A stretch of 64,000 nt of DNA. Origin: Ascidiella aspersa (lineage: Eukaryota). Below, piece by piece: positions 2,177-64,000 of the stretch. Under the pieces are notes generated by a model. It saw only the letters and a list, made by a program, of their open reading frames with translations. It had not been told where the DNA came from and searched no databases. Position numbers and translations under genes: made by a program. Every line of letters starts with the position of its first letter. Within the stretch, counting starts at the first letter, position 1. The stretch is taken from positions 11,780,001 to 11,844,000 of the forward strand of contig OZ004610.1 in NCBI GenBank assembly GCA_963924565.1. The letters run 5' to 3'.

Positions 2177-33735
<31,559 letters not shown>

Positions 33736-47593: not shown

Positions 47594-50482
47594 ATGGACG
47601 TTTTTTGCAAGGCAGCAATTTTTCTGTTTTTTGGCCTCGTTTTGACGGAAGGAAGATTCGTAATTCCGCCGCAGAACTCACTTCGCGACGACGGAGTGGC
47701 AGTGTCACCAATTTCAGGTAAAAATTGTCAGGCCGAATTCGATTATAAAAAGCGTATTCAAGGTTTCTAATTAAAAAAAATCGCACGAATAATTTAACTT
47801 GCGGAAACCGTTTTCACACAAACAAGTTTTTGAGTGCGTTTATAAAGGTGCGTTTTATGTGTATGACTGCGTAGTGCTTTGGTGGTGATTGATGTGGTTC
47901 ACAAGCCAAGATAAGGTTATCGGTACTCGAATATAAATGTCAAAATTAACAAAAAATGCCTTCTGTCTGAAATAATTATTTAATTGCTAGTTAAATTTAC
48001 AGCGTGCGACGAGGTTCTCTCCAAGACGTTAGTTCGCCTTTTGGTATCCGAATACAACAGGATCGGCGCTTCAAATCAGCTCTACGTGCCAGCCGGCGTG
48101 CCAGCCGTCGAATGCAAGGTGGTTATCACTGCTTCTTTTCCATTTGACTTAGCTGTAATGACTGTATTCCGGTAATTTCAAACGTTGTGAGCTGTTTTTC
48201 CCTCATAAATATATTGGGCACAGTGCGGAGGTAAACTACCAAATAAACTTTTGCGGAGGTAAACTACCAAGTAAACCACAATTCAAAATTGGGGACCAGA
48301 GTTTGAAATAATATACTTACCCTAAGGTAGAGCTAACGGTTACAGTGGGCCTAATAGCTTTTCGAAACTTGTCCGGTCGACAGCTTGAAACGCATCAAAA
48401 ATCCGTCCACATGTTGGTAACGTGTATATATATGGTTTGAGTGCAATAAAAAAAAAAAAAATGACAACCTAAATAAACAAAATAACAAGGGCATATTTTA
48501 AATGAGAAATACAAAATTATCTGGACAAAACCTAATGGAGGAAACTGTTGGGCACTGTTGTTTATGGTTGCACTAAATTGTTTTCACTAAACGTAATTTT
48601 AGATGAAATGCCCATAAGTTACACTGACATAAAATTCTCATGCAAGATGCTGTTTATTCTACACCCTGACTAGGATTGGCCCTGACTATAGGTTTAATCA
48701 CTAACAAACGACAAAAATAGTGTTAGCTTAATCGTGGTAAAATTGTTAACTTGTTGATTGGTGGATTTAATTTTCAAAATGGGCGAAAACTATTATAGGC
48801 AGAGGTAAGGCCCTTAAATAATTCAGAAATGACCGAACTCCAACAAATCAGATGAAAAAGAGCCCCTTAAAGCTATTACAAGCAACGCGCCGCGTTTTCC
48901 AAGTTCTTTAAAACAATTGTTGACATTTTATCAAACACGTATGAAAGACATAATGTATTTTAAGCTACACGGTTTCCATATTTATCGCGTTGGAGCGAAT
49001 CCAGGTCACTGCGTCCCAGAAGATATGATCACTTTTTCACGCGTCGATACGGACCTATATAGGCTCCAGCGCACCATTTAATCTATCGGCTATCCAATAA
49101 GCATTCGATTTAAAATCGAGGCGTTGTGTTGGTTTAACACTAAGTTAATAAACATATCTGTCCCGCCCACTATTCCCAAGACGTGGCAACGACAGACAAA
49201 AAATCGATGGAAACATATGTTGAGAACTTAAAAGAAGCAACCAAGTATAACTTAAAGGTCGACAAACCGCATATCGATTTTTCCTAATCATAATAAAGCT
49301 GCCGCAACTAACACCCAGGAGTGGAGTGTGATGGATAATCGTTCGGCATTTAACGCTTGTATTGTCCATTTAGAGCATCGACGGGCAGGAATGTGATCTT
49401 TACGTTGATTTGGCGCCGACATCTTGCAAGAGAAGCACTTCGACATTCTGGTTCGATTGTCAGCCCATCTCGTCACAGGTTAACCTTTTGTCCGTAGTCA
49501 TTTTTGCCCGAACCATTTTGGGGCAAATATGCCATTTCAAAAAGTTTACTTTTTAACCGCCTGTTACAATTTAACACTCGGGCAAAGTCAATGGTCCTTT
49601 TTTTAAATCGTTAAGGACACTCGGCTTAAAGATAAAGAAAGGGTTTAGCCATTATATTGAAGTTTTGTTATCGAGCAGGGCAGCTGAAGTCATTGCGCGT
49701 TTGGTTGATGATTTATCCCATATTTCGGAATTTATCAGTTTCAAATTTGCATAGTATGCGCCAGTCGTCTTGCGTTAAATTTTGTGTGTGATGTTGTCAC
49801 ATCCTGTAATCTTAGTGAATTTCGTGTTTATATTGACCAGGGTTTTGGACCAATCTTCCGTACGTACAGTCATCGTTTGTGTAACGTTTTAAAGTAACGG
49901 GATTCAGGCAACACTAAAATAAACATTATTTTAATATAGTTCTAGTCAAAAGACGAGAAGCCAAATATTGTAGAAACAGTTCAACAAGAAAAATCTCACT
50001 CTGTAAGCCATAAAACACTAGAAATGTTACCGCCAGATAAGCGAAAAGTCTCCTTTAAACGTTTGTTAAACATTGGAATCTTTCAGAATAATACAGAAGC
50101 TGGTCGGAAGACCGTACAACTTAACCCAAAAAACACCTAAAGCAAAACAAGAATTTAACACTTAACATGGCAATGCTCTGATCCCTGGTCAAATAGCATT
50201 ACATCAAAAAACTGTTTGTATAGTGGCATTTTTTACATTCCACAGGGTATAAAGCGCTGCCGGGGAACAGTCAACTTACAAAGTGGTACCGTCGAGGTAC
50301 CGTTGCGTTGTCAAGGCAACAACGGTCCGCTTGGCTTTCCCAATCAAGTGAACAACAACATGCAAATGGGAGGCGCGGATGGATACCCCAATTTCAACGG
50401 GGACGGCTTTTTGGCGGAGGACGGTAGCGAGGTTATGAAGAAGAAGTGGGAAAGCACTTCTGGCAACATCCAGCCGTTTTAA
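47594..50482 (+). CDS. Gene A: secreted cathelin (cathelicidin pro-domain / cystatin-fold) protein, 4 exons, 193 aa
   Basis: Exons 47594-47717, 48003-48118, 49374-49478, 50246-50482. Signal peptide MDVFCKAAIFLFFGLVLTEG; EYNRIGASNQLYV; LAPTSCKRSTSTFWFDCQPISSQ|GIKRCRGTVNLQSGTVEVPLRC. TATATAGA at ~47490 and AATAAA at 50624. Confidence 0.82.
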
Positions 50483-52862
50483 AAACGTTTGGGAACGGTA
50501 CAGGACGACCACTTTGCCACAAATTTTGTTGCTAGTTTTCCTTGCCATTTTGTCGTACTGAGGTATTTTTGTCGGTGTGATTTACGGACCTTTCCCTTTC
50601 GCAAACGATTTTTATTTATTTCCAATAAAGTGATTGAGTGGAAGTAGCAGAAACGACAAGACCCAATTATCAATATAGCCTAAGGCTATGGTAAACCTAA
50701 CAGAAATAAAGAATAGGTGAAAAATTAGGGTAAGGACACATCAGACAACTGGACTGTTCAAAGGCTGCCTATTTTTCAAACTATAAAACAGTTCCCAGAA
50801 AGAGGGTTTAAAAATACAAAAGGTCATAAAAACTCTCAACAGAGGTTGGAAGCATTGCACGTTTAAAACTTAAACAGCTACATTTTAAAAGTTTACGCAT
50901 AATTACCCTGTTTATATATCAGGTCACTATAGCTAAAAAAATTATGTTAACCAGCCAGGTGTCGGACAATCACGATCAAGGATAGTCTGGAATAGCTCAG
51001 TAAGTAGACAATGCGTCGTGTGTCAAATCGAATAAACTGGCCTTGTATACCGCCAGATCGTGCAATAAATGTATATCTTGGGCGTGTTGTACATCGCGAA
51101 GGCGGACTGCTTACATGTCGCGTACACAGAACATGTGTTTCGCGAAAACAAAGATGCATGATTGTCTAACAATAAACTTTGGAGCATAATGGTTGGAGGT
51201 TGTAGTAAGACGTAATAAGAATATCAAAGCCCATACAGAAGTAGGTATCATTTTGGACGTTTCGAATAACTCTTTATTCATTTTCAACATGAAAAAAGCG
51301 CCCTTTTGCCAAACTGTGGACCCAACACAGGCAAACGGCGTATACATAAATGTCAATTGGATAATTAAAAGCGTCTCTGCCAAGTTCCCAGGGTTTAAGA
51401 GGCCTTTTTCTTTCGATCCAAACTTTGCAATATTGTCGATCCGGACAAAGGTTCTATGGGCGATAGCACTCTTTTTAAGTTACTGATTCAGTTGCACATT
51501 TTACATCATTTTTGCAGACAGATAACGCGAAAAATTTAAATGCAAGTATATATTCAGCTACAAATCACGTATTTTAAATTTCAGAAGAGGTTTATTATCC
51601 AGCGGGTTTGGTATACACATTTTCTCGTTTCACTGCAAACCTGTCACAAACCACTTTTAACTAACACACAGTCATCCCTTTCAAGTAAAGATCATTAATA
51701 GTTTTCAACTCATGGAAAGGTCATACGCGCTGCGAACTATCGTCGATTTTATGAAGTGCAACGTTCGACTCCTAGCATCAAACCCACCACTGTAATGCTT
51801 TTTTGATGTGTTCATTTTTCTTATTATACCGGTATACTGCCATAAAGATATTTCATTTTTTTGTGTCTTTTTACTTTGCGTCTTGTTGGCCATGTGTGTC
51901 ATTCCCTGATAAAGGCTTTCTGAATAGTTAGCCGAAACGTTGGATAAACAAATATATACCAGAAGAACTTATTTTTAGTATATCCAAGCAAGACGCGATA
52001 CCAGCTAAAATAGCCAGGTATCCTCGCAAGGGCTTCTCAATCAGAAAAAACGGTTTACTCTGCCGAACGTGACAGGAAACATCAGCCGGCTTCGGTCTGG
52101 AAAAGGCCGACTTGGCTACAGCATCGGGAAGGTTGACCGCAGTACCTCGCCTCGTTATCTACCGACAGCTGAGCAAAATCGGGCTTCAGAATGCCGCACT
52201 AGTTATTCGTTGAGGCAGACTTTCGTCGGGAGTTTGTAGAGAGTGCCTTCCATGAACACTGAACAGTTATCGTTCGGCATCTCTCAGGAAATGTTGGTAA
52301 AAAGGACAGTGGCAAAATAACTTGTATGTGAAGCTTAATACACCGCTTAGATTAAAAGGTTTAAATTGATAATTGTATGTCTGGTAAGTTCAGAAATTAC
52401 AGTGCACAGGCTTGGAAAATCAATAGATATCGCCTTAACACAAATTAAGCAGGCGACTAAAGACAAAAATGAACCTAAAAATTAAATAAATCCTATATCT
52501 TGCGAAACTGTTACTTTTATCCGAAATTACAAATTAAACTCGATTATCGTGATTGTAAAATTGCAAACTTCATGATATTTTTGGTACGGACAAAAGGAAA
52601 CAAGTAGCGTTTTCAAACTGCGACTAGAGGTTTCGCTAATTTACGTTTCAAAGTAGTCGAGGCATTGCTCTTTTCCGAATAGGGCCCAATGACTGAAATA
52701 GGAATTGACTCCTTCCGCCAATCAAAGCAGCGAGCAAAACGGTGACGGCGCGACTCTTGCGCAAGGTGGCTGCCATTCGAAAGTGTCGCAAATCTCGCTA
52801 CCTTTTTGTCGCAGGTTCCTGTAGTTTGTGGACGCATTTAGACTGTGCAAAACACGTCAAGG

Positions 52863-55800
52863 ATGGCCTCGGCTGCGCTGTGTCTAAGTTCGATCGTCTT
52901 ACTGGCGATTGTCGCCACGGAAGGCAACCACCACGATGGAAGGTAAGGTGTAAGTCGGTCTATTGTTTGGCATGGGTAGAACGAATAAGGGTATTGTTGG
53001 CAATGTTTTTCAAACGTTAGTTGAAATGGGTTCAACCGGCTACAATCGGACTACATAAATCGTTCGTTATGTGTTGTAATTCGATAAATAAGATTTTAAA
53101 GGCATTCCATAAAAATATTTTTTTTTATTAGTGTCGAAAATTGACAAAACTATTTAGTAATACCGTTAACAGGTGGTCCATCGCGCTGAAACCACTTTGT
53201 TAAACACGATTGCAATGTTTTCTTTAAAATTACTTCTCCACGAAAAACAAAATCATGTAAATGGACGTAAACTTATATTTCTTTATTCCTACTCCGCGAT
53301 ATTTAAAATTGGGCAAATTTCAAACATCTCTCGAGTAGCTAATTTACTTGACTCTCAGGGATAATAACATTGTAGGCCCATGTAGGGGTATTTGGGCTCA
53401 AAAAAAAACAATGAAAGCTTTCTCCAGCCATGTTCGCAGAAATTGAATCTGCCGATTACTCGTGGTAAAACTTACAGGAGAAAATGATTGACGAGCCCCA
53501 GAAAGCTTTGCGGGCAAAAGACGATTAACGTCTGAAGCCATGGGCAAATTTTCACGGAAACCAAATCAACACGATCTTCTCCCAACGTTTTTAGTCGGAC
53601 TTTTCGTGTTTCGCTCAATACACGGCCGAGCTTTGTCGCTTGCACCGACGTAAATTTTCGAGTTTTGTCAGGCTTTTTTCGGGAGTATGGTATGCGATTG
53701 TAACAACAACTATGAACATCCAGTTGGGACCAGCAAAAAACAACAAAAAAGAAATTCAGATAATTAACTGCGAAATGCATTAATATTTATACACACAAGA
53801 AGCGTACTTTTCCCGCAGCTACCCGACGTACCTTCTGCCAGGAGTGAAAAGAAGCTACCGGCGCCAATACCAGCCTTCGTATCGCCTTCCTGTGAGATCG
53901 CCCTACGGCCGCGTTCAGCGTCATTACCGACCCAGTTCAAGGCCGAAGTACTACTACATTCCACGGCGAACCGTTCAATACAGAAGCAGGCGAATCCCGC
54001 AGCCCAGTAACTCGACGTGGAGCGATCCATACGTTCTGCCTCACGAACGCGTCTCCAGACCAAGGTGTATATCCTCACAAAAGTGTTTAATCTATGAAAT
54101 TTTAAGGGACCGTCAAGGTTTTGTAAAATATAGACAAGTCCGTGACAACAGCAGAGATTTAGAAGTTGGTACTCCTCAAGATTAAATGGTTGAGGTTACT
54201 CAAAATTTATTTTGCGGTCCTTTAAATTTTCTTAGAGGTCACCAAAGACAAACCTTCAAAACACTCTGCTCACAATTATAAGATGCAAATAATTTCAGTT
54301 GACATGGACGCGAAAACTAAGCTTATTACTCTCCTTTGGGAATTTATGTGAGAAGACAGTTAGCTTTTTTGGAATGCTTGTTTAATTCTCACGTATGACG
54401 AGGATAAAGTAAACAAATTTATTTTAGTAAAATTGTGCTCCATCTAACTAAATGCGAAAATATCTTGCGTTGCCATGTTAGCGACACGCAGCAAGAAATA
54501 AATACAGCCAAATCCCTGTGAACCTTACAACAGTTAACTCAAGTAATGTAAACGTTATTCACATATTCACGCGGAGTTTCCAAAAAAAACATCAGAGGCT
54601 AAAGTGTCCGCGGCAATATTTCCAAATCACATTTTGGCAGCAATATTTCGCAACACTAACCACGCCAAAACTAACGAGTGCGTGTCTTTAACAGCAGAGT
54701 AGCGGCAGTGGTGGCGACGAACCCTGACACTGCGGCGTACACACTTCCACGCGATACTCCAGCCTTGCTGCTTCCCAACGTGCAACCGGCGAAGAGCTTT
54801 TCTCCACTGTTAAATGGACACATGAGGATCCCGTATCGCCGACCAGTGGTGGACATGGGGTAATAAACTAGCGCAGTGGCGCCCTGGTGTGCCATTTCTA
54901 AAGCTCAATGGTGTCGATAGGTAGTTAGGAATGTGATATTTGCTCAGTTGGTAAGCTTTTTGGTGCAACAATTTGTGTGCGATTAGAGACAGTTATATAT
55001 AAACCTTTTTTTGATGCCCTAATATTATCCGACATTTTGATTTAGTGATGCAACTTGGGCGAAAGAAACAATCCTTAAAAATAGATTGTACTAATTTTTT
55101 AACTTGAATCTGAACAACGTTGCTTTCGTTTGATGTAGTTCGATGCCGGGTGCGGCTGGCATGCGTGTTGCGTCATCGCGCGCAAAGGTCTGCCCTTGGA
55201 ACATGATTCCTGCAAAATCGACTTCCAGCAAAGTACTGGAAGAAGCTTTGCAAATCTCGCAGACGAACGTCTCGTTCGTATTGAAGAACATCAAAGAATC
55301 GATGGTGAGACTGTTTGTCCAAGTCTATTTTTTTCTTAGAAAAATTGTCATATAGTTGTAAGCTTTCCTAGGACAATTCTATTAAAGCCTGTACTTCTAT
55401 TTGAAGCTGAGAAAGTGCCGCCGGTGCACCAGCTTGGGATGCACTCCAGCTTGGCAAGTGGCCATCATGCGCATCACCCTGGCGAGGGCGGACGGCTGTG
55501 ATTGGATGGACAAGTGCGAGTGTCAGCCAATCGAAAACGTGAGCTGGCGCAGTTGTTTGCATTTGAAATGTAACAGAACTAGGAAGGATTAGCAGGGGCG
55601 TCCACAGGTGCATTTCGTGTTCGGCGGTTATGTAAACCGGCGTTTGATGTACATTTTGAGCAGCGAAGGTAAATTTGCTGCGACCGAACGACATCGGTCC
55701 CACGACAAACATACGCTTCAGACAGTGGTCTAAAGTCCAATCGTCTAGTTATGATTTCAATGTGAAAAGTACTAAAGGAGGTAATTGTACTGGTTTGCCG

Positions 55801-57239
55801 CGTTGGGGAATCTTTGCTGCCGGATAAACCAACTATATAAAAATTTAGTATTTTCCAGGAATACTTTCAAATAGAGTTGTAAGTAGAATCGAAGTATAAA
55901 CCATCGGAAACTTTTAAACTTCGTCTAAGCATGGCAGTACCTTCTGTAATGTTTTCATTTTAACATACTATTGCTTCAGGGTTTAAAATACTTTTGCTTA
56001 AAGGTTTATGCTTTTGCTTCAAGAGTTATACCCCGCTTATGTCTTATTACGGTATACCTAATTTTGTTGTTGCACAGGACTGGGAAATTGAATGCAATGT
56101 GGAAGGAACGATCTTGCATAACACGATCTCCGTGACCAACTTCACGATAACGTGCGAGGAAACCAACAAGCCTGAGGTGAGACGCGAAGTGAAAAAGGAG
56201 TTGATCGACTAGCGTTCGCCATGAGTCATAAACCACCAAATGATTTAGCATACCTCGGCATTTGCAATGGAGGTGTCGAAGTGACGCGCCGCAAATATTT
56301 GATAACGAGCCGTCAGTCAATGAAGGGCTAAAGCAGTGGTTCTCAACCTTCGTGCCATTTCTAATGCCCAAGGGTGCCGATAAGTAATTGAGAACCTTCA
56401 AGAATCTGATTTTTGCTAAACTCGTTTATTGTGATATTCTTGTGATTTACCTACGGAAAAATCTTGTAGGGGTGCCGCAATCTATTTATTATTTCTGGGG
56501 GCTAAAGCAGTGCTTCTTAAAACATTTTTAGTTTTGTTCACCACTAGCATTTATCTCCAGATTTCATTCATCCTTGTCTCATGATATGATAAAACTATTT
56601 TGTCTATATATAACAGCACAAAATGAACACCCAGAATATCTGCCCTGCTGGCAAGCTATCACCCATTTTCTCACCCTTAGTCACCCCTGCAAAAATTGTA
56701 TTCATCCCAGGTTGAACCATTCACCTGATTAAGAAACACTGGGCTTAAGGACAAAGCGTTTTTCAGCAGTAGCAATGGTAAAATCAATTAGAGATAATTA
56801 ATTACACATTTTCTAATGCCTTATTTCACAGGGATTTGACCCGTGGGCCAAAGAGGGAGGTAAACATGTCCACCACCATCATCCGGATACAACAACGCCC
56901 GAGACCACCTTGGTTACCGATGAAGAGCAAACTGAGATGGAGGAAGAAGAAGAAGAAGAGGCTCCGGAACAAGGAGCATCCACCGAAGTCGTTACGACAG
57001 AGGCGCCGGAAGTGCCAGCGGAGCCACAGGATCCCGAAAAACCGAAGGATCGGATAAACGGCGATGAGGAGGAAGTGGGAAGCGGATCGGACGTCGGGAT
57101 TATCCTGATTCCTCCCATCATAGAGATCGCACCTCCAGGTCGCGGGGACTTTAACGGCAAGGAGCCGGAGCCGGATGATGCTCCACCACCGGCTCCTCTT
57201 CTCAACGACCTGAAGCAGGATGACCTCATTCGCTTTTAG
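52863..57239 (+). CDS. Gene B copy 1: secreted 431-aa protein with an Arg/Tyr/Pro-rich segment, a divergent cathelin/cystatin-like Cys domain and an acidic RGD-containing tail; 7 exons
   Basis: Exons 52863-52942, 53819-54064, 54695-54859, 55139-55304, 55407-55538, 56078-56176, 56832-57239 (1296 nt, phases 2,2,2,0,0,0). Signal peptide MASAALCLSSIVLLAIVATEG; AATAAA at 57385. Confidence 0.8.
56334..56741. mobile_element. Two adjacent hAT-type MITEs (truncated 56334-56499; complete 56508-56741), duplicated in unit 2 from ~63645
   Basis: The first starts CAGTGGTTCTCAACC. The second has TIR CAGTGCTTCTTAA / TTAAGAAACACTG. The 8-mer GGCT(A/T)AAG occurs before, between and after them. Confidence 0.75.
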
Positions 57240-57872
57240 ATCAAGGAGTCCCCTATTGGAAATCATTATAATCGCCAAAACTTTTTGGTCCGCAGTTCCC
57301 GGGCGTTCCTATCACCGCCCATGTGTTTTTTTCGCTGCTGGATGTTGCTTTATTTGCTTTTAATCCACATCGCTGTTAAATTAAAATAAAATCGCTGCTT
57401 TTCGCGCTAAAAGTCACGCACGCCGTTGTACAAAACTTAATTTTTGTTTAACAACATAACATAATAACTTTGGAAAAGTTTTTAGTTTTTAAATGTATTT
57501 TATCTAAAATTTTGAATGGTATTACTTCAGATTTTAAGAGGATCCAAAACATTAAAGAAGGCAGAAAAAAAAACTTTCGTAATACTGCGCGTACTGAAAG
57601 AACCAACCAGAAAAACTTGCCAGACGAAGTCACGCCACCGTCTCAATCACTATATGGCGCATAGCAATTTTCAACGATCGTATGACAAGAAACGCGAGCG
57701 CGAAAGCACGTCACTCGGCACGCAAGCGATGGAAATACGCAAGAATTTTACGGGAATTAGCGGGGCTTAAACATTTTTCTAACCGTCCGCAGACCAGAGC
57801 TATGCCAGGTATGCGTCGCGGCCCCGTGCGACGCGAGCGAAATATTTCCCTCATTCGGGTCGGAGATTGGTC

Positions 57873-57973
57873 ATGGCGAGGTGCGGAGGATTTTTCGGGC
57901 TGTTTTCGACAGTTGCTCTCTTGCTGCACGCCGCCGCTTCTGTTCAAGTCGGCGGAAATGCGATCGAAATATG
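57873..57973 (+). CDS. Orphan first exon (signal peptide) of a third secreted gene, cut off by the duplication junction
   Basis: ATG, then MARCGGFFGLFSTVALLLHAAASVQVGGNAIEI, then TG|GTGAGG (phase-2 donor). It is preceded by a CpG-rich stretch (57660-57870), and unit 2 begins ~110 bp into the intron. Confidence 0.6.
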
Positions 57974-60144
57974 GTGAGGCTTAGTAGAATGACCCGGACG
58001 TTATTTAGGGCTGACAGCTTCGAAAGTGATTTTTTAGTTTTCTCTTTAGGAAACTCTCGGTGTACAGGGTGATTTCATGTGTTCGTGCAATACATGTATA
58101 TCTTGGGCGTGTTGTACATCGCGAAGGCGGACTGCTTACATGTCGCGTACACAGAACATGTGTTTCGCGAAAAAAAAGATGCATGATTGTCTAGCTTTAG
58201 CGTTTGCAGTTGGCCGCCTAGAACAGTTATATCCAACCGAAAAAACACGATTCAATAGCGATAAATTTACCATATATAACAACAAGCTAATAAACTATAC
58301 TACTCTGAAGTCATTTTAATGCTATATAAAAGGGTGTAACTTTGTGGAATCAGAAACCATAGCAGGTTTTTGCTTTTCAGTCAATGTTCCACTGACGCGA
58401 TATCACCCAAAGGAGGAATATATATATTCGCTTAAACCAGTGATTCTCAAATAAGTGTGCCGGGGGATGTTTTTTAATACACGATTGCAAATTTACTTGT
58501 AAAGGGTTAGGGGCATCGGTAAGGTGAAAGGGTTTGCCACATGCCTTCTCTCTGTGAGGAAACAAGATAAAGACAGCGCCCTTTTGCCAAACTGTGAACC
58601 CAACAAGGTAAACGGCGTATACATAAATGTCAATTGGATAATTAAAAGCGTCTCTGCCAAGTTCCCAGGGTTTAAGTGGCCTTTTTCTCTCGATCCAAAT
58701 TTTGCAATATTGTCGATCCGGACAAGGGTTCTATGGGCGATAGCACTCTTTTTAAGTTACTGATTCAGTTGAACATTTTACATCATTTTTGCAGACAGAT
58801 AACGCGAAAAATTTGAATGCAAGTATATATTCAGGTACAAATCACGTATTTTAAATTTCAGACGAGGTTTATTATCCAGCGGGTTTGGTATACACATTTT
58901 CTCGTTTCACTGCAAACCTGTCAACAATCCACTTTTAACTAACACACAGTCATCCCTTTCAAGTAAAGATCATTAATAGTTTTCAACTCATGGCAAGGTC
59001 ATACGCGCTGCGAACTATCGTCGATTTTATGAAGTGCAACGTTCGACTCCTAGCATCCAACTCACCACTGTAATGCTTTTTTGATGTGTTCATTTTTCTT
59101 ATTATACTGATATACTGCCATAAAGATATTTCATTTTTTTTGTGTCTTTTTACTTTGCGTCTTGTTGGCCATGTGTGTCATTCCCTGATAAAAGGCTTTC
59201 TGAATAGTTAGCCGAAACGTTAGATAAACAAATATATACCAGAAGAACTTATTTTTAGTATATCCCAGCAAGACGCGATACCAGCTAAAATAGCCAGGTA
59301 TCCTCGCAAGGGCTTCTCAATCAGAAAAAACGGTTTACTCTGCCGAACGTGACAGGAAACATCAGCCGGCTTCGGCCTGGAAAAGGCCGACTTGGCTACA
59401 GCATCGGGAAGGTTGACCGCAGTACCTCGCCTCGTTATCTACCGACAGCTGAGCAAAATCGGGCTTCAGAATGCCGCACTAGTTATTCGTTGAGGCAGAC
59501 TTTCGTCGGGAGTTTGTAGAGAGTGCCTTCCATGAACACTGAACAGTTATCGTTCGGCAGCTCTCAGGAAATGTTGGTAAAAAGGACAGTGGCAAAATAA
59601 CTTGTATGTGAAGCTTAATACACCGCTTAGATTACAAAGGTTTAAATTGATAATTGTATGTCTGGTAAGTTCAGAAATTACAGTGCACAGGCTTGGAAAA
59701 TCAATAGATATCGCCTTAACACAAATTAAGCAGGCGACTAAAGACAAAAATGAACCTAAAAATTAAATAAATCCTATATCTTGCGAAACTGTTACTTTTA
59801 TCCGAAATTACAAATTAAACTCGATTATTGTGATTGTAAAATTGCAAACTTCATGATATTTTTGGTACGGACAAAAGGAAACAAGTAGCGTTTTCAAACT
59901 GCGAGTAGAGGTTTCGCTAATTTACGTTCTCAAGTAGTCGAGGAATTGCTCTTTTCCGAATAGGGCCCAATCAGACTGAAATAGGAATTGACTCCTTCCG
60001 CCAATCAAAGCAGCGAGCAAAACGGTGACGGCGCGACTCTTGCGCAAGGTGGCTGCCGTTCGAAGGTGTCGCACATCTCGCTACCTTTTTGTCGCAGGTT
60101 CCTTTAGTTTGTGGACGCATTTAGACTGTGCAAAAACGTCAAGG

Positions 60145-63100
60145 ATGGCCTCGGCTGCGCTGTGTCTAAGTTCGATCGTCTTACTGGCGATTGTCGCCAC
60201 GGAAGGCAACCACCACGATCGAAGGTAAGGTGTAAGTCGGTCTATTGTTCGGCATGGGTAGAACGAATAAGGGTATTGTTGGCAATGTTTTTCAAACGTT
60301 AGTTGAAATAGGTTCAACCGGCTACAATCGGACTACATAAATCGTTCGTTATGTGTTGTAATTCGATAAATAAGATTTTAAAGGCATTCCATGAAAATAT
60401 TTTTTTTTATTAGTGTCGAAAATTGACAAAACTATTTAGTAATAACGTTAACAGGTGGTCCATCGCGCTGAAACCCCTTTGTTATCACGATTGCAAAGTT
60501 TTCTTTAAAATTACTTCTCCACGAAAAACGAAACCATGTGAATGGACGTAAACTTATATTTCTTTTCTTATTCCTACTCCGCGATATTTAAAATTGGGCA
60601 AATTTCAAACATCTCTCGAGTAGCTAATTTACCTGACTCTCAGGGATAATAACATTGTAGGCCCATGTAGCGGTATTTGGGCTCAAAAAGAAACAATGAA
60701 AGCTTTCTCCAGCCATGTTCGCAGAAATTAAATCTGCCAATTACTCGTGGTAAAACTTGCAGGAGAAAATGATTGACGAGCCCCAGAAAGCTTTGCGGGC
60801 AAAAGACGATTAACGTCTGAAGCCATGGGCAAATTTTCACGGAAACCAAATCAACACGATCATCTCCCAACGTTTTTAGTCGGACTTTTCGTGTTTCGCT
60901 CAATACACGGCCGAGCTTTGTCGCTTGCACCGACGTAAATTTTCGAGTTTTGTCAGGCTTTTTTCGGGAGTATGGTATGCGATTGTAACAACAACTATGA
61001 ACATCCAGTTGGGACCAGCAAAAAACAACAAAAAAGAAATTCAGATAATTAGCTGCGAAATGCATTAATATTTATACACACAAGGAGCGTACTTTTCCCG
61101 CAGCTACCCGGCGTACCTTCTGCCAGGAGTAGAAAGAAGCTACCGGCGCCAATACCAGCCTTCGTATCGCCTTCCTGTGAGATCGCCCTACGGCCGTCTT
61201 CAGGGTCATTACCGACCCAGTTCAAGGCCGAAGTACTACTACATTCCACGGCGAACCGTTCAATACAGAAGCAGGCGAATCCCGCAGCCCAGTAACTCGG
61301 TGTGGAGCGATGCATACGTTCTGCATCACGAACGCGTCTCCAGACCAAGGTGTATATCCTCACAAAAGTGTTTAATCTATGAAATTTTAAGGGACCGTCC
61401 AGGTTTTGTAAAATATAGCCTAAGTCCGTGACAACAGCAGAGATTTAGAAGTTGGTACTCCTCAAGATTAAATGGTTGAGATTACTCAAAATTTATTTTG
61501 CGGTCCTTTAAATTTTCTTAGAGGTCACCAAAGACAAACCTTCAAAACACTCTGCTCACAATTATAAGATGCAAAGAATTTCAGTTGACATGGACGCGAA
61601 AACTAAGCTTTTTATTACTCTCCTTTGGGAATTTATGTGAGAAGACAGTTAGCTTTTTTGGAATGCTTGTTTAATTCTCACGTATGACGAGGATAAAGTA
61701 AACAAATTTATTTTAGTAAAATTGTGCTCCATCTAACTAAATGCGAAAATATCTTGCGTTGCCATGTTAGCGACACGCAGCAAGAAATAAATACAGCCAA
61801 ATCCCTGTGAACCTTACAACAGTTACCTCAAGTAATGTAAACGTTATTCACATATTCACGCGGAGTTTTAAAAAAAAACATCAGAGGCTAAAGTGTCCGC
61901 GGCAATATTTCCAAGTCACATTTTGGCAGCAATATTTCGCAACACTAACCACGCCAAAACTAACGAGTGCGTGTCTTTAACAGCAGAGTAGCGGCAGTGG
62001 TGGCGACGAACTCTGACACTGCGGCGTACACACTTCCACGCGATACTCCAGCCTTGCTGCTTCCCAACGTGCAACCGGCGAAGAGCTTTTCTCCACTGTT
62101 GAATGGACACATGAGGATCCCGTATCGCCAACCAGTCGTGGACATGGGGTAATAAACTAGCGCAGTGGTTCTCAACCGGGTTGCCGCGGCGCCCTGGTGT
62201 GCCATTTCTAAAGCTCAAGGGTGTCGATAGGTAGTTAGGAATGTGATATTTGCTCAGTTGGTAAGCTTTTTGGTGCAACAATTTGTGTGCGATTAGAGAC
62301 AGTTATATATAAACCTTTTTTTGATGCCCTAATATTATCCGACATTTTGATTTAGTGATGCAACTTGGGCGAAAGAAACAATCCTTAAAAATAGATTGTA
62401 CTAATTTTTTAAGTTGAATCTGAACAACGTTGCTTTCGTTTGATGTAGTTCGATGCCGGGTGCGGCTGGCATGCGTGTTGCGTCATCGCGCGCAAAGGTC
62501 TGCCCGTGGAACATGATTCCTGCAAAATCGACTTCCAGCAAAGTACTGGAAGAAGCTTTGCAAATCTCGCAGACGAACGTCTCGTTCGTATTGAAGAACA
62601 TCAAAGAATCGATGGTGAGACTGTTTGTCCAAGTCTATTTTTTTCTTAGAAAAATTGTCATATAGTTGTAAGCTTGCCTAGGACAATTCTATTAAAGCCT
62701 GTACTTCTATTTGAAGCTGAGAAAGTGCCGCTGGTGCACCAGCTTGGGATGCACTCCAGCTTGGCAAGTGGCCATCATGCGCATCACCCTGGCGAGGGCG
62801 GACGGCTGTGATTGGATGGACAAGTGCGAGTGTCAGCCAATCGAAAACGTGAGCTGGCGCAGTTGTTTGCATTTGAAATGTAACAGAACTAGGAAGGATT
62901 AGCAGGGGCGTCCACAGGTGCATTTCGTGTTCGGCGGTTATGTAAACCGGCGATTAACATCAGATAACGAAAGTCAGGGGTAAATTTGCTGCGACCGAAC
63001 GACATCGGTCCCACGACAAACATACGCTTCAGACAGTGGTCTAAAGTCCAATCGTCTAGTTATGATTTCAATGTGAAAAGTACTAAAGGAGGTAATTGTA

Positions 63101-63487
63101 CTGGTTTGCCGCGTTGGGGAATCTTTGCTGCCGGATAAACCAACTATATAAAAATTTAGTATTTTCCAGGAATACTTTCAAATAGAGTTGTAAGTAGAAT
63201 CGAAGTATAAACCATCGGAAACTTTTAAACTTCGTCTAAGCATGGCAGTACCTTCTGTAATGTTTTCATTTTAACATACTATTGCTTCAGGGTTTAAAAT
63301 ACTTTTGCTTAAAGGTTTATGCTTTTGCTTCAAGAGTTATACGCCGCTTATGTCTTATTACGGTATTCCTAATTTTGTTGTTGCACAGGACTGGGAAATT
63401 GAATGCAATGTGGAAGGAACGATCTTGCATAACACGACCTCCGTGACCAACTTCATGATAACGTGCGAGGAAACCAACAAGCCTGAG
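60145..63487 (+). CDS. Gene B copy 2, exons 1-6 (last exon expected just beyond the window)
   Basis: Exons 60145-60224, 61104-61349, 61984-62148, 62449-62614, 62717-62848, 63389-63487. Same lengths and splice sites as copy 1, with the frame open. Confidence 0.8.
62163..62250 (+). mobile_element. hAT MITE left-end fragment (same family as 56334); counterpart at ~54874 has a 21-bp deletion
   Basis: CAGTGGTTCTCAACCGGGTTGCCGCGGCGCCCTGGTGTGCCATTTCTAAAGCTCAAGGGTGTCGATAGGTA; copy 1 reads CAGTGGCGCCCTGG. Confidence 0.65.
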
Positions 63488-64000
63488 GTGAGACGCGAAG
63501 TGAAAAAGGAGTTGATCGACTAGCGTTCGCCATGAGTCATAAACCACCAAATGATTTAGCATACCTCGGCATTTGCAATAGAGGTGTCGAAGTGACGCGC
63601 CGCAAATATTTGATAACGAGCCGTCAGTCAATGAAGGGCTAAAGCAGTGGTTCTCAACCTTCGTGCCATTTCTAATGCCCAAGGGTGCCGATAAGTAATT
63701 GAGAACCTTCAAGAATCTGATTTTTGCTAAACTCGTTTATTGTGATATTCTTGTGATTTACCTACGGAAAAATCTTGTAGGGGTGCCGCAATCTATTTAT
63801 TATTTCTGGGGGCTAAAGCAGTGCTTCTTAAAACATTTTTAGTTTTGTTCACCACTAGCATTTATCTCCAGATTTCATTCATCCTTGTCTCATGATATGA
63901 TAAAACTATTTTGTCTATATATAACAGCACAAAATGAACACCCGGAATATCTGCTCTGCTTGCAAGCTATCACCCATTTTCTCACCCTTAGTCACCCCTG

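What the first reader, a model, noticed from the sequence alone, without database searches (positions are those of the whole stretch)
47594..50482. Cathelicidin-like gene in an apparently invertebrate genome
Seen: signal peptide, then LVRLLVSEYNRIGASNQLYV, then C(KRSTSTFWFD)C(QPISSQGIKR)C(RGTVNLQSGTVEVPLR)C, which is C-x10-C-x10-C-x16-C, then a free C-terminal tail. Phase-0 introns fall 17 residues before the first of these Cys and 4 residues before the third. Established (recalled human CAMP): [20 protein letters not shown], the same 10-10-16 spacing, LVKRCMGTVTL, and phase-0 introns 18 residues before Cys1 and at DG|LVKRC. Cathelicidins are generally described as vertebrate-restricted. Inference: a pre-vertebrate member of the cathelicidin/SPP2/chemerin branch of the cystatin superfamily. 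No ORF in the track shows the domain because it is split over short exons.
Basis: partly seen in the sequence, partly recalled or inferred. Interest (0 to 1): 0.88.

Follow-up and report, generated by a model that had tools for sequence, protein, structure and literature searches.

The report
Possible cathelin-like cystatin gene in sea squirt
A small four-exon gene in this probable sea-squirt genome encodes a secreted protein whose cysteine spacing and intron positions copy the cathelin/cystatin domain of vertebrate defence peptides. No sequence search confirms the kinship, and its tail is acidic, so it is a promising but unproven lead and not a cathelicidin in the working sense.

Summary
A clean GT-AG four-exon model (47594-50482, +) gives a 193-codon reading frame with a signal-peptide-like start. 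It has C-x10-C-x10-C-x16-C across exons 3-4, with phase-0 introns 17 residues before Cys1 and 4 before Cys3. That is the published cathelin spacing (C85/C96/C107/C124) and, for the first intron, the published position.

Each exon searched alone hits nothing in Pfam, the PDB, 1.84 billion protein representatives, the ESM Atlas or JGI metagenomes. The 56-residue tail is acidic (pI 4.3, net -3), so it is not a cationic peptide. No RNA read was laid on the gene.

Three neighbouring genes (B, its 7.3-kb tandem copy B', and C just beyond the window) share the helix / strand / hairpin exon layout. They are not statistically related to gene A.

The host is very probably a tunicate (chromosomal GH6 exon).

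Best reading (about 0.5): a divergent, secreted, non-inhibitory protein with a cystatin fold of the cathelin type.

That step would decide the matter.

The scan has not noted this on other DNA; two earlier notes concern gene B in this same window.

The parts
47594..47717 (+). Gene A exon 1: start codon, signal-peptide-like hydrophobic segment, short N-terminal stretch; ends in phase 1
   Evidence: donor CAG|GTAAAA; GC 0.48
48003..48118 (+). Gene A exon 2: Cys, amphipathic helix (the ...SEYNRIGASNQLY stretch), then a strand-like Pro/Val segment ending ...VECK; ends in phase 0
   Evidence: helix-like then strand-like hydrophobic moment; GC 0.56
49374..49478 (+). Gene A exon 3 (35 codons, phase 0 at both ends): turn SIDGQEC, strand ...LYVDLAPTS, then Cys1-x10-Cys2 and CQPISSQ
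50246..50311 (+). Gene A exon 4, first part: GIKR, then Cys3-x16-Cys4 with two strand-like arms around a QSG turn
50312..50482 (+). Gene A exon 4, second part: 56-residue G/N/Q/P/S-rich acidic tail (pI 4.3, net -3, one KKK) and the stop codon
50624..50629 (+). AATAAA polyadenylation-like signal 142 nt after the stop
   Evidence: by consensus only
49883..50151 (.). 269-bp single-copy insertion/deletion polymorphism inside intron 3; some DNA contigs of two public runs lack it
55140..56176 (+). Gene B core, a possible distant paralogue: helix exon 55140-55304, strand exon 55407-55538 (44 codons), hairpin exon 56078-56176 (33 codons); C-x10-C across a phase-0 intron, then C-x19-C
   Evidence: relation to gene A not significant
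62450..63487 (+). Gene B' core: the same three exons in a 7.3-kb tandem copy that is 93-100% identical block by block (mostly 97-100%)

Best explanation
Gene A is a real, intact gene for a small secreted protein. Its core, encoded by exons 2-4, most likely adopts the cystatin fold in its cathelin-like form. The parts would be an N-terminal amphipathic helix, a beta hairpin at the exon 2/3 junction, a 10-residue disulfide loop, and a short final hairpin closed by a C-x16-C disulfide. In gene A the first hairpin may be stapled by an extra C-x7-C pair.

The papain-binding wedge of true cystatins is degenerate. K|SIDG stands where QxVxG would be, and there is no Pro-Trp in the last hairpin. I therefore infer that gene A is not a classical cathepsin inhibitor.

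It carries a 56-residue acidic, probably disordered tail in place of a cationic peptide. The architecture (signal, cathelin-type domain, free tail) thus resembles a cathelicidin or chemerin precursor, but the cargo does not.

Shown: the gene model, the Cys spacing, the intron positions and phases, the tail composition, and the lack of close paralogues. Inferred: the fold, the disulfide pairing, secretion, loss of inhibitor activity, and any role in defence.
For: - The gene model is clean and coding-like.
- The Cys spacing 10/10/16 equals the published cathelin disulfide positions C85-C96 and C107-C124, which that paper calls invariably conserved (PMC3932039).
- Published exon 1 of pig cathelicidins covers 29+37 residues (PMC3487008). 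That places the first intron 18 residues before C85; in gene A it is 17.
- The chance of the spacing alone is 7e-5.
- The hydrophobic-moment profile is helix-like over the first 21 residues of exon 2, strand-like in exon 3, and shows two strand-like arms around a turn in exon 4.
- Polymorphisms in DNA contigs of two runs leave the frame, the splice sites and all pattern cysteines intact: 3 synonymous and 2 conservative changes.
- Three adjacent genes show the same helix-exon | strand-exon | hairpin-exon layout with phase-0 introns, and C-x10-C across the second intron.
- For urochordates, Kordis & Turk list only a stefin and no secreted cystatin. My genome scan with PF00031 likewise found only a stefin exon. 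A very divergent secreted lineage would fill that gap.
Against: - No exon alone matches Pfam Cathelicidins, Cystatin or anything else, nor any PDB chain.
- Genome-wide scans with PF00666 and PF00031 do not pick this locus.
- Exon 4 finds only low-complexity junk among 1.84 billion representatives.
- The ESM Atlas and JGI metagenomes are blank.
- Profiles of genes B/B'/C do not rank gene A's exons above background. Shuffle tests give z = 2.1 against B and 0.1 against C.
- The mature protein has an odd number of cysteines (7).
- No RNA evidence exists: 0 reads from the one RNA run, which is no test.
- The resemblance was recognised after the fact from one recalled family.
Confidence: 0.5

Rival explanations
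1. Chance or convergent look-alike. Gene A would be a lineage-specific small secreted cysteine-rich protein of another or a new fold, and its Cys spacing and intron positions coincide with cathelin by accident.
For: All exon-wise sequence and profile searches are blank. There is no significant similarity even to the neighbouring genes with the same layout. There are seven cysteines rather than four. The pattern match is post hoc, drawn from a scan of very many windows.
Against: The exact 10/10/16 spacing (P about 7e-5) coincides with two phase-0 introns at the family's positions, a signal peptide, and a helix-strand-hairpin periodicity in the right order. That combination is hard to get by accident.
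Confidence: 0.3
2. True cathelicidin-type precursor. The cathelin-like domain would be a pro-piece, and the C-terminal tail or a fragment after the KKK site would be released by proteolysis as a bioactive or defence peptide.
For: The architecture is signal + cathelin-spaced domain + free tail. There is a tribasic KKK 11 residues from the C-terminus.
Against: The tail has pI 4.3 and net charge -3, and 54% of it is G/N/Q/P/S, so it is not amphipathic or cationic. No separate exon encodes the tail, unlike every cathelicidin gene (PMC3932039, PMC3487008). No elastase-type site is evident. No expression data exist.
Confidence: 0.05
3. Working protease inhibitor. Gene A would be the tunicate's secreted type-2 cystatin, much diverged, still inhibiting legumain through the Ser-Asn just after the helix, or some papain-like enzyme.
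For: The ...EYN....SN..Y stretch after the helix recalls, from my memory of cystatin C and E/M, the loop that carries Asn39. That residue is the legumain-reactive one (PMC8070812). The Gly of the first hairpin is kept in K|SIDG. From my memory, the intron positions equal those of type-2 cystatin genes.
Against: QxVxG is not kept and Pro-Trp is absent. The last loop is 16 residues, not about 19. PF00031 does not score any exon. The motif resemblance rests on recalled sequences and gave no PDB hit.
Confidence: 0.1
4. Not a functional gene: an unexpressed or decaying open reading frame assembled from fortuitous splice sites.
For: There is no RNA read, no homologue anywhere, and exon SNP density is only slightly below that of the introns.
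Against: Four exons stay in frame with consensus splice sites. Only this combination of sites keeps the frame open. There is a marked exon/intron GC contrast, a polyA signal, and no stop or frameshift in the other haplotypes.
Confidence: 0.05

Closest known systems
Cathelicidins (cathelin-like domain, Pfam PF00666; e.g. human CAMP/hCAP-18, pig protegrins)
   Same: Signal peptide. Four cysteines spaced exactly 10/10/16. Phase-0 introns about 17-18 residues before Cys1 and (from memory) 4 before Cys3. A short last hairpin without Pro-Trp. A local ...KRC.GTV.L resemblance (recalled). A C-terminal extension beyond the domain.
   Different: No HMM recognition exon by exon. The tail is acidic and low-complexity, not cationic. 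The tail is not on a separate fourth exon; instead an extra phase-1 intron follows the signal peptide. Three extra cysteines. The host is a tunicate, whereas the family is described as arising in the vertebrate ancestor (PMC2784779).
Type-2 cystatins (Pfam PF00031; cystatin C, E/M, chicken cystatin)
   Same: Secreted. Helix followed by strands. Two C-terminal disulfide loops. One domain split by two phase-0 introns at the same places (from memory: cystatin C, 17 residues before Cys1 and 3 before Cys3). A ...EYN...SN..Y-like stretch after the helix (recalled). The Gly of the first hairpin is kept.
   Different: QxVxG is replaced by K|SIDG. No Pro-Trp. The last loop is 16 residues, not about 19, and the inter-loop spacing is 10, not about 13. 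A 56-residue tail. No PF00031 score.
Chemerin (RARRES2) and Spp24 (SPP2): non-inhibitory cystatin-fold proteins with functional C-terminal tails
   Same: The general plan: signal peptide, one cystatin-like domain, then a tail that in those proteins is trimmed or binds ligands.
   Different: No comparison could be run. Their cysteine patterns and tails differ as far as I recall. Both are listed as vertebrate or gnathostome inventions (PMC2784779).
Genes B, B' and C of the same cluster (window 52863-57239, about 60140-64000+, and L010:3060-4898)
   Same: Same strand, adjacent. A helix exon, then a phase-0 symmetric strand exon ending C.(Q/R)(P/A)I.., then a hairpin exon. C-x10-C across the second intron. 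Extra tails.
   Different: The first hairpin is longer, with three more cysteines. The last loop is 19 residues, not 16. B has long N-terminal basic and C-terminal acidic extensions. There is no significant sequence similarity to gene A.

Membership tests
Cathelicidin (PF00666) | Four conserved cysteines forming C85-C96 and C107-C124, i.e. spacing 10/10/16 | tested here: met
   Spacing read from exons 3 and 4; reference positions from PMC3932039. The disulfide pairing itself is inferred.
Cathelicidin (PF00666) | Recognition by the Pfam Cathelicidins profile above its cut-off | tested here: inconclusive
No exon alone scores. The genome scan gives only an unrelated 16.5-bit hit on another chromosome.
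Cathelicidin (PF00666) | Four-exon gene: exons 1-3 encode signal plus cathelin, and a separate exon 4 encodes the variable peptide | tested here: not met
   The two introns inside the domain are at the family's positions. However, the tail shares its exon with the last hairpin, and the extra intron lies after the signal peptide.
Cathelicidin (PF00666) | Cationic C-terminal peptide released by proteolysis | tested here: not met
   The tail has pI 4.3, net charge -3, 3 K/R against 6 D/E, and 54% G/N/Q/P/S. Processing was not testable.
Cathelicidin (PF00666) | Cystatin-like fold (helix on a twisted antiparallel sheet) | not testable with these tools
   The spliced protein has no reference, so it could not be folded. 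Only a hydrophobic-moment profile consistent with helix / strand / hairpin is available.
Type-2 cystatin (PF00031) | QxVxG first hairpin loop | tested here: not met
   K|SIDG lies at the exon 2/3 junction. Motif definition from PMC8070812.
Type-2 cystatin (PF00031) | Pro-Trp in the second hairpin loop | tested here: not met
   The 16-residue loop between Cys3 and Cys4 has no PW.
Type-2 cystatin (PF00031) | Signal peptide and two disulfides in the C-terminal half | tested here: met
   The spacing differs from the usual about 9/13/19 (recalled).
Type-2 cystatin (PF00031) | Recognition by the Pfam Cystatin profile | tested here: inconclusive
   No exon scores. The genome scan finds only a stefin exon on contig C9. 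The joined protein was not searched.
Type-2 cystatin (PF00031) | Legumain-reactive Asn in the loop after the helix (only some members) | tested here: inconclusive
   A Ser-Asn lies two residues further from the helix than I recall for cystatin C (PMC8070812). No alignment could be made.
Chemerin / Spp24 | Family profile match and characteristic cysteine pattern | not tested
   No reference sequences could be brought in by a tool, and the joined protein could not be scanned.

The most novel reading that the evidence does not exclude
Gene A, and perhaps B, B' and C, would be the tunicate descendants of the ancestral chordate secreted cystatin, already remodelled into non-inhibitory cathelin-type carrier domains with attached tails. 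If so, the scaffold and gene structure from which vertebrates built cathelicidins predate the split between tunicates and vertebrates. Tunicates would then have not lost secreted cystatins but diverged them beyond recognition by sequence.
Probability: 0.2. Interest if true: 0.8.

Novelty: new member of a known kind. Interest (0 to 1): 0.5.

Why it matters
Cathelicidins are treated as a vertebrate invention. The standard survey of the cystatin superfamily lists only a stefin for urochordates. A tunicate gene with the exact cathelin disulfide spacing and intron positions would move the origin of that scaffold to the common ancestor of tunicates and vertebrates. It would also give an outgroup for asking how an inhibitor fold became a carrier for defence peptides. 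If the resemblance is accidental, gene A is just one more orphan secreted protein.

Tried and rejected
Homology searches, all blank or uninformative:
- Pfam on every exon and on the open frames around them, for genes A, B and C.
- PDB sequence search with exons 2, 3 and 4, with the 25-residue hairpin alone, and with profiles of the A/B/C exon alignments. Only chance hits appeared: avidin, Rab/LRR, Rieske, NEGR1.
- phmmer of exon 4 against 1.84 billion representatives gave eight long low-complexity proteins and no relative. In hindsight this exon was a poor choice, because only 22 of its residues belong to the domain.
- ESM Atlas with exons 2 and 3 gave no usable hit.
- Own-genome searches with gene A exons gave self hits only. 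PF00666 gave a chance hit on C7 with no cysteine exons behind it. PF00031 gave only a stefin gene.

Relation of gene A to its neighbours:
- I asked whether the shared repeat after genes A and B meant an old A/B duplication. It is merely the start of the recent B/B' 7.3-kb unit at about 51058.
- Profiles and shuffle tests linking A to B/C were not significant.

Expression and literature:
- The RNA run X3 gave 0 reads from about 6% of the run, which is no test.
- I could not retrieve the original PR-39 gene paper. A search for the exon sizes gave nothing.

Steps not taken:
- The search for homologous proteins was not used. Its length window (0.55-1.75 times the query) excludes a 193-residue protein for every stop-free reference containing exons 2-4.

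Full report
**What is there**

On the + strand a four-exon model runs from the ATG at 47594 to the stop at 50480-50482. The exons are 47594-47717, 48003-48118, 49374-49478 and 50246-50482. All introns are GT-AG, with donors CAG|GTAAAA, AAG|GTGGTT and CAG|GTTAAC and pyrimidine-rich acceptors.

The exons sum to 582 nt, which is 193 codons plus the stop. Exon GC is 0.48-0.56 against 0.33-0.38 in the introns. An AATAAA lies 142 nt after the stop.

- Exon 1 begins with a hydrophobic signal-like segment.
- Exon 3 ends ...C-x10-C-QPISSQ.
- Exon 4 begins GIKR-C-x16-C and continues with a 56-residue tail.

The pattern C-x10-C-x10-C-x16-C is therefore real. So are the two phase-0 introns, 17 residues before the first and 4 before the third cysteine.

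The first intron is phase 1. There are three more cysteines, one just before the helix and two flanking the exon 2/3 junction as C-x7-C, so the mature protein has seven. The tail is acidic: pI 4.3, net -3, and 54% G/N/Q/P/S.

**Is it more than chance?**

The published cathelin disulfides are C85-C96 and C107-C124, which is the spacing 10/10/16. That paper calls the spacing invariably conserved, within a four-exon gene (PMC3932039).

Exon 1 of pig cathelicidin genes carries 29 signal and 37 cathelin residues (PMC3487008). That puts the first intron 18 residues before C85. From memory only, exon 2 has 36 codons, which would put the second intron 4 residues before C107. I could not retrieve the source.

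Random placement of seven cysteines in 172 residues gives a 10/10/16 run with P = 7e-5. My rough estimate for two of three introns falling at those codon positions is of the same order. Together this is unlikely even for a large scan. The null is crude, though, and the match was recognised after the fact.

A hydrophobic-moment profile, run exon by exon, is helix-like over the first 21 residues of exon 2. It is strand-like over ...QECDLYVDLAPT in exon 3. It shows two strong strand-like arms around a QSG turn between Cys3 and Cys4. That is the order of elements in a cystatin fold, but this is weak evidence.

**What failed**

The joined protein was neither built, nor scanned, nor folded.

- No exon, nor the open frame around it, matches any Pfam family.
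- No exon matches any PDB chain. The 25-residue hairpin alone was also tried.
- Genome-wide scans of this assembly with PF00666 and PF00031 do not pick the locus. The first gives a chance hit on another chromosome. The second gives a stefin gene on contig C9.
- Exon 4 finds only long low-complexity proteins among 1.84 billion representatives.
- The ESM Atlas and JGI metagenomes are blank.
- The exons have no second copy in the 308.6-Mb genome.
- The one RNA run of this organism gave no read from about 6% of its data, which is no test.

DNA contigs of two other runs cover the gene at 95-99% identity. They carry five coding differences: three synonymous, one Glu to Gln and one Phe to Leu. None touches a cysteine, a splice site or the frame. 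They also show a single-copy 269-bp indel in intron 3.

**The neighbourhood**

Upstream, on the minus strand, lie a GH31 glycosidase gene and an EF-G (GFM1-like) gene.

Downstream of gene A, on the same strand, lies gene B (52863-57239). Its core is built in the same way. A helix exon (55140-55304) is followed by a 44-codon phase-0 exon ending ...C-E-C-QPIEN (55407-55538). Then comes a 33-codon exon DWEIE-C-x19-C (56078-56176), so C-x10-C spans the intron.

B is repeated as B' in a 7.3-kb tandem unit whose blocks are 93-100% identical, mostly 97-100%, starting near 51058. A third, diverged member, C, lies just beyond the window (L010:3060-3230, 3870-4001, 4260-4379). It has 37-39% identity to B in the strand exon. 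A second EF-G-like gene follows it.

Genome-wide, profiles of B/B'/C find only these three. The one other hit is a doubtful fragment 4.6 Mb away.

The layout is shared with gene A, but the sequence relation is not demonstrable. Profiles built from B/B'/C rank gene A's helix exon 1160th and its strand exon 143rd among about 3100 open frames, and give its hairpin exon no listed rank. Composition-preserving shuffles give z = 2.1 against B and 0.1 against C, whereas B against C gives z = 12. I therefore treat B, B' and C as possible distant paralogues, not as support.

**Host**

Earlier notes of this scan call the genome a sea squirt; they are unchecked leads.

As an independent check, a glycoside-hydrolase-6 exon above Pfam's cut-off sits inside a chromosome-scale contig, at more than 19.6 Mb. 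Among animals, a GH6 domain is known only from the tunicate cellulose synthase (established knowledge). With a 308.6-Mb genome, 38% GC and short introns, a vertebrate source is very unlikely.

**Comparison with what is known**

Kordis and Turk date cathelicidins to the vertebrate ancestor. Their supplementary table lists for Urochordata only a stefin, with a dash under cystatins (PMC2784779). I found no paper in the held library describing a tunicate secreted cystatin or cathelin-like protein.

Gene A meets the cathelicidin cysteine spacing and the two intra-domain intron positions. It fails two defining features:
- There is no cationic peptide.
- There is no separate peptide exon.

Against type-2 cystatins it fails QxVxG, where K|SIDG stands, and it fails Pro-Trp (motifs as in PMC8070812).

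From my memory of cystatin C, the same two intron positions (17 and 3 residues before Cys1 and Cys3) are shared by type-2 cystatin genes. The exon structure therefore argues for the superfamily and not for the cathelicidin branch. What is cathelin-like specifically is the 10/10/16 spacing and the short last hairpin. The recalled local resemblances (...KRC.GTV.L; ...EYN...SN..Y) gave no database hit, so I give them little weight.

**Verdict**

My best reading, at about 0.5, is a real gene for a secreted, divergent, probably non-inhibitory cystatin-fold protein of cathelin type with an acidic disordered tail.

The rivals are:
- a chance look-alike of another fold (0.3);
- a still-working inhibitor, perhaps of legumain (0.1);
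- a true peptide precursor (0.05);
- a non-functional frame (0.05).

It should not be filed as a cathelicidin. Profile scanning and folding of the joined protein, junction-spanning RNA reads, and exon-wise searches of other tunicate genomes would decide the matter quickly.

Noticed in passing
window 51058-58300 and 58083-64000 (continuing into L010:1-1500): A 7.3-kb tandem duplication whose blocks are 93-100% identical (mostly 97-100%) carries the whole of gene B and its copy B'. It is either very recent, homogenised by conversion, or an assembly duplication.
   Followed up: partly
L010:3060-4898 (G000:C4:11847060-11848898): Gene C is a third, diverged member of the gene B family. It has the same 44-codon phase-0 strand exon, C-x10-C across the intron, C-x19-C, and a Ser/Thr/Asp-rich tail.
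   Followed up: partly
L010:6558-6713 minus strand: A second EF-G-like gene (EFG_III domain exon) lies just after gene C. The cluster of cysteine-rich genes therefore sits between two EF-G genes on the minus strand.
   Followed up: no
window 49883-50151: A single-copy 269-bp segment in intron 3 of gene A is absent from some DNA contigs of two public runs. It is an ordinary indel polymorphism, not a repeat element.
   Followed up: yes
L022:1501-1599 minus strand (G000:C4:7167599-7167676): An isolated open frame resembles the gene B/C helix exon (CPW...KVL...IS; E = 0.06 genome-wide). No convincing downstream cysteine exons follow. It may be a decayed relative or chance.
   Followed up: partly
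L004:1414-1635 and 2230-2508 minus strand (G000:C9, about 4508416): An ordinary stefin (type-1 cystatin) gene with QLVAG. It is the only PF00031 candidate in the genome at exon level.
   Followed up: partly
L011:1501-1740 (G000:C5:19613851-19614090): A glycoside-hydrolase-6 exon inside a chromosome-scale contig, as expected of the tunicate cellulose synthase. I used it as independent support for a tunicate host.
   Followed up: partly
window about 19900-32200 minus strand: Several GH31 (alpha-glucosidase type) exons, probably one large or tandem-domain gene.
   Followed up: no
L010:4480-4560: A tRNA-like stretch lies in the intron after gene C's hairpin exon. ARAGORN calls no tRNA there, so it may be a SINE remnant.
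   Followed up: partly
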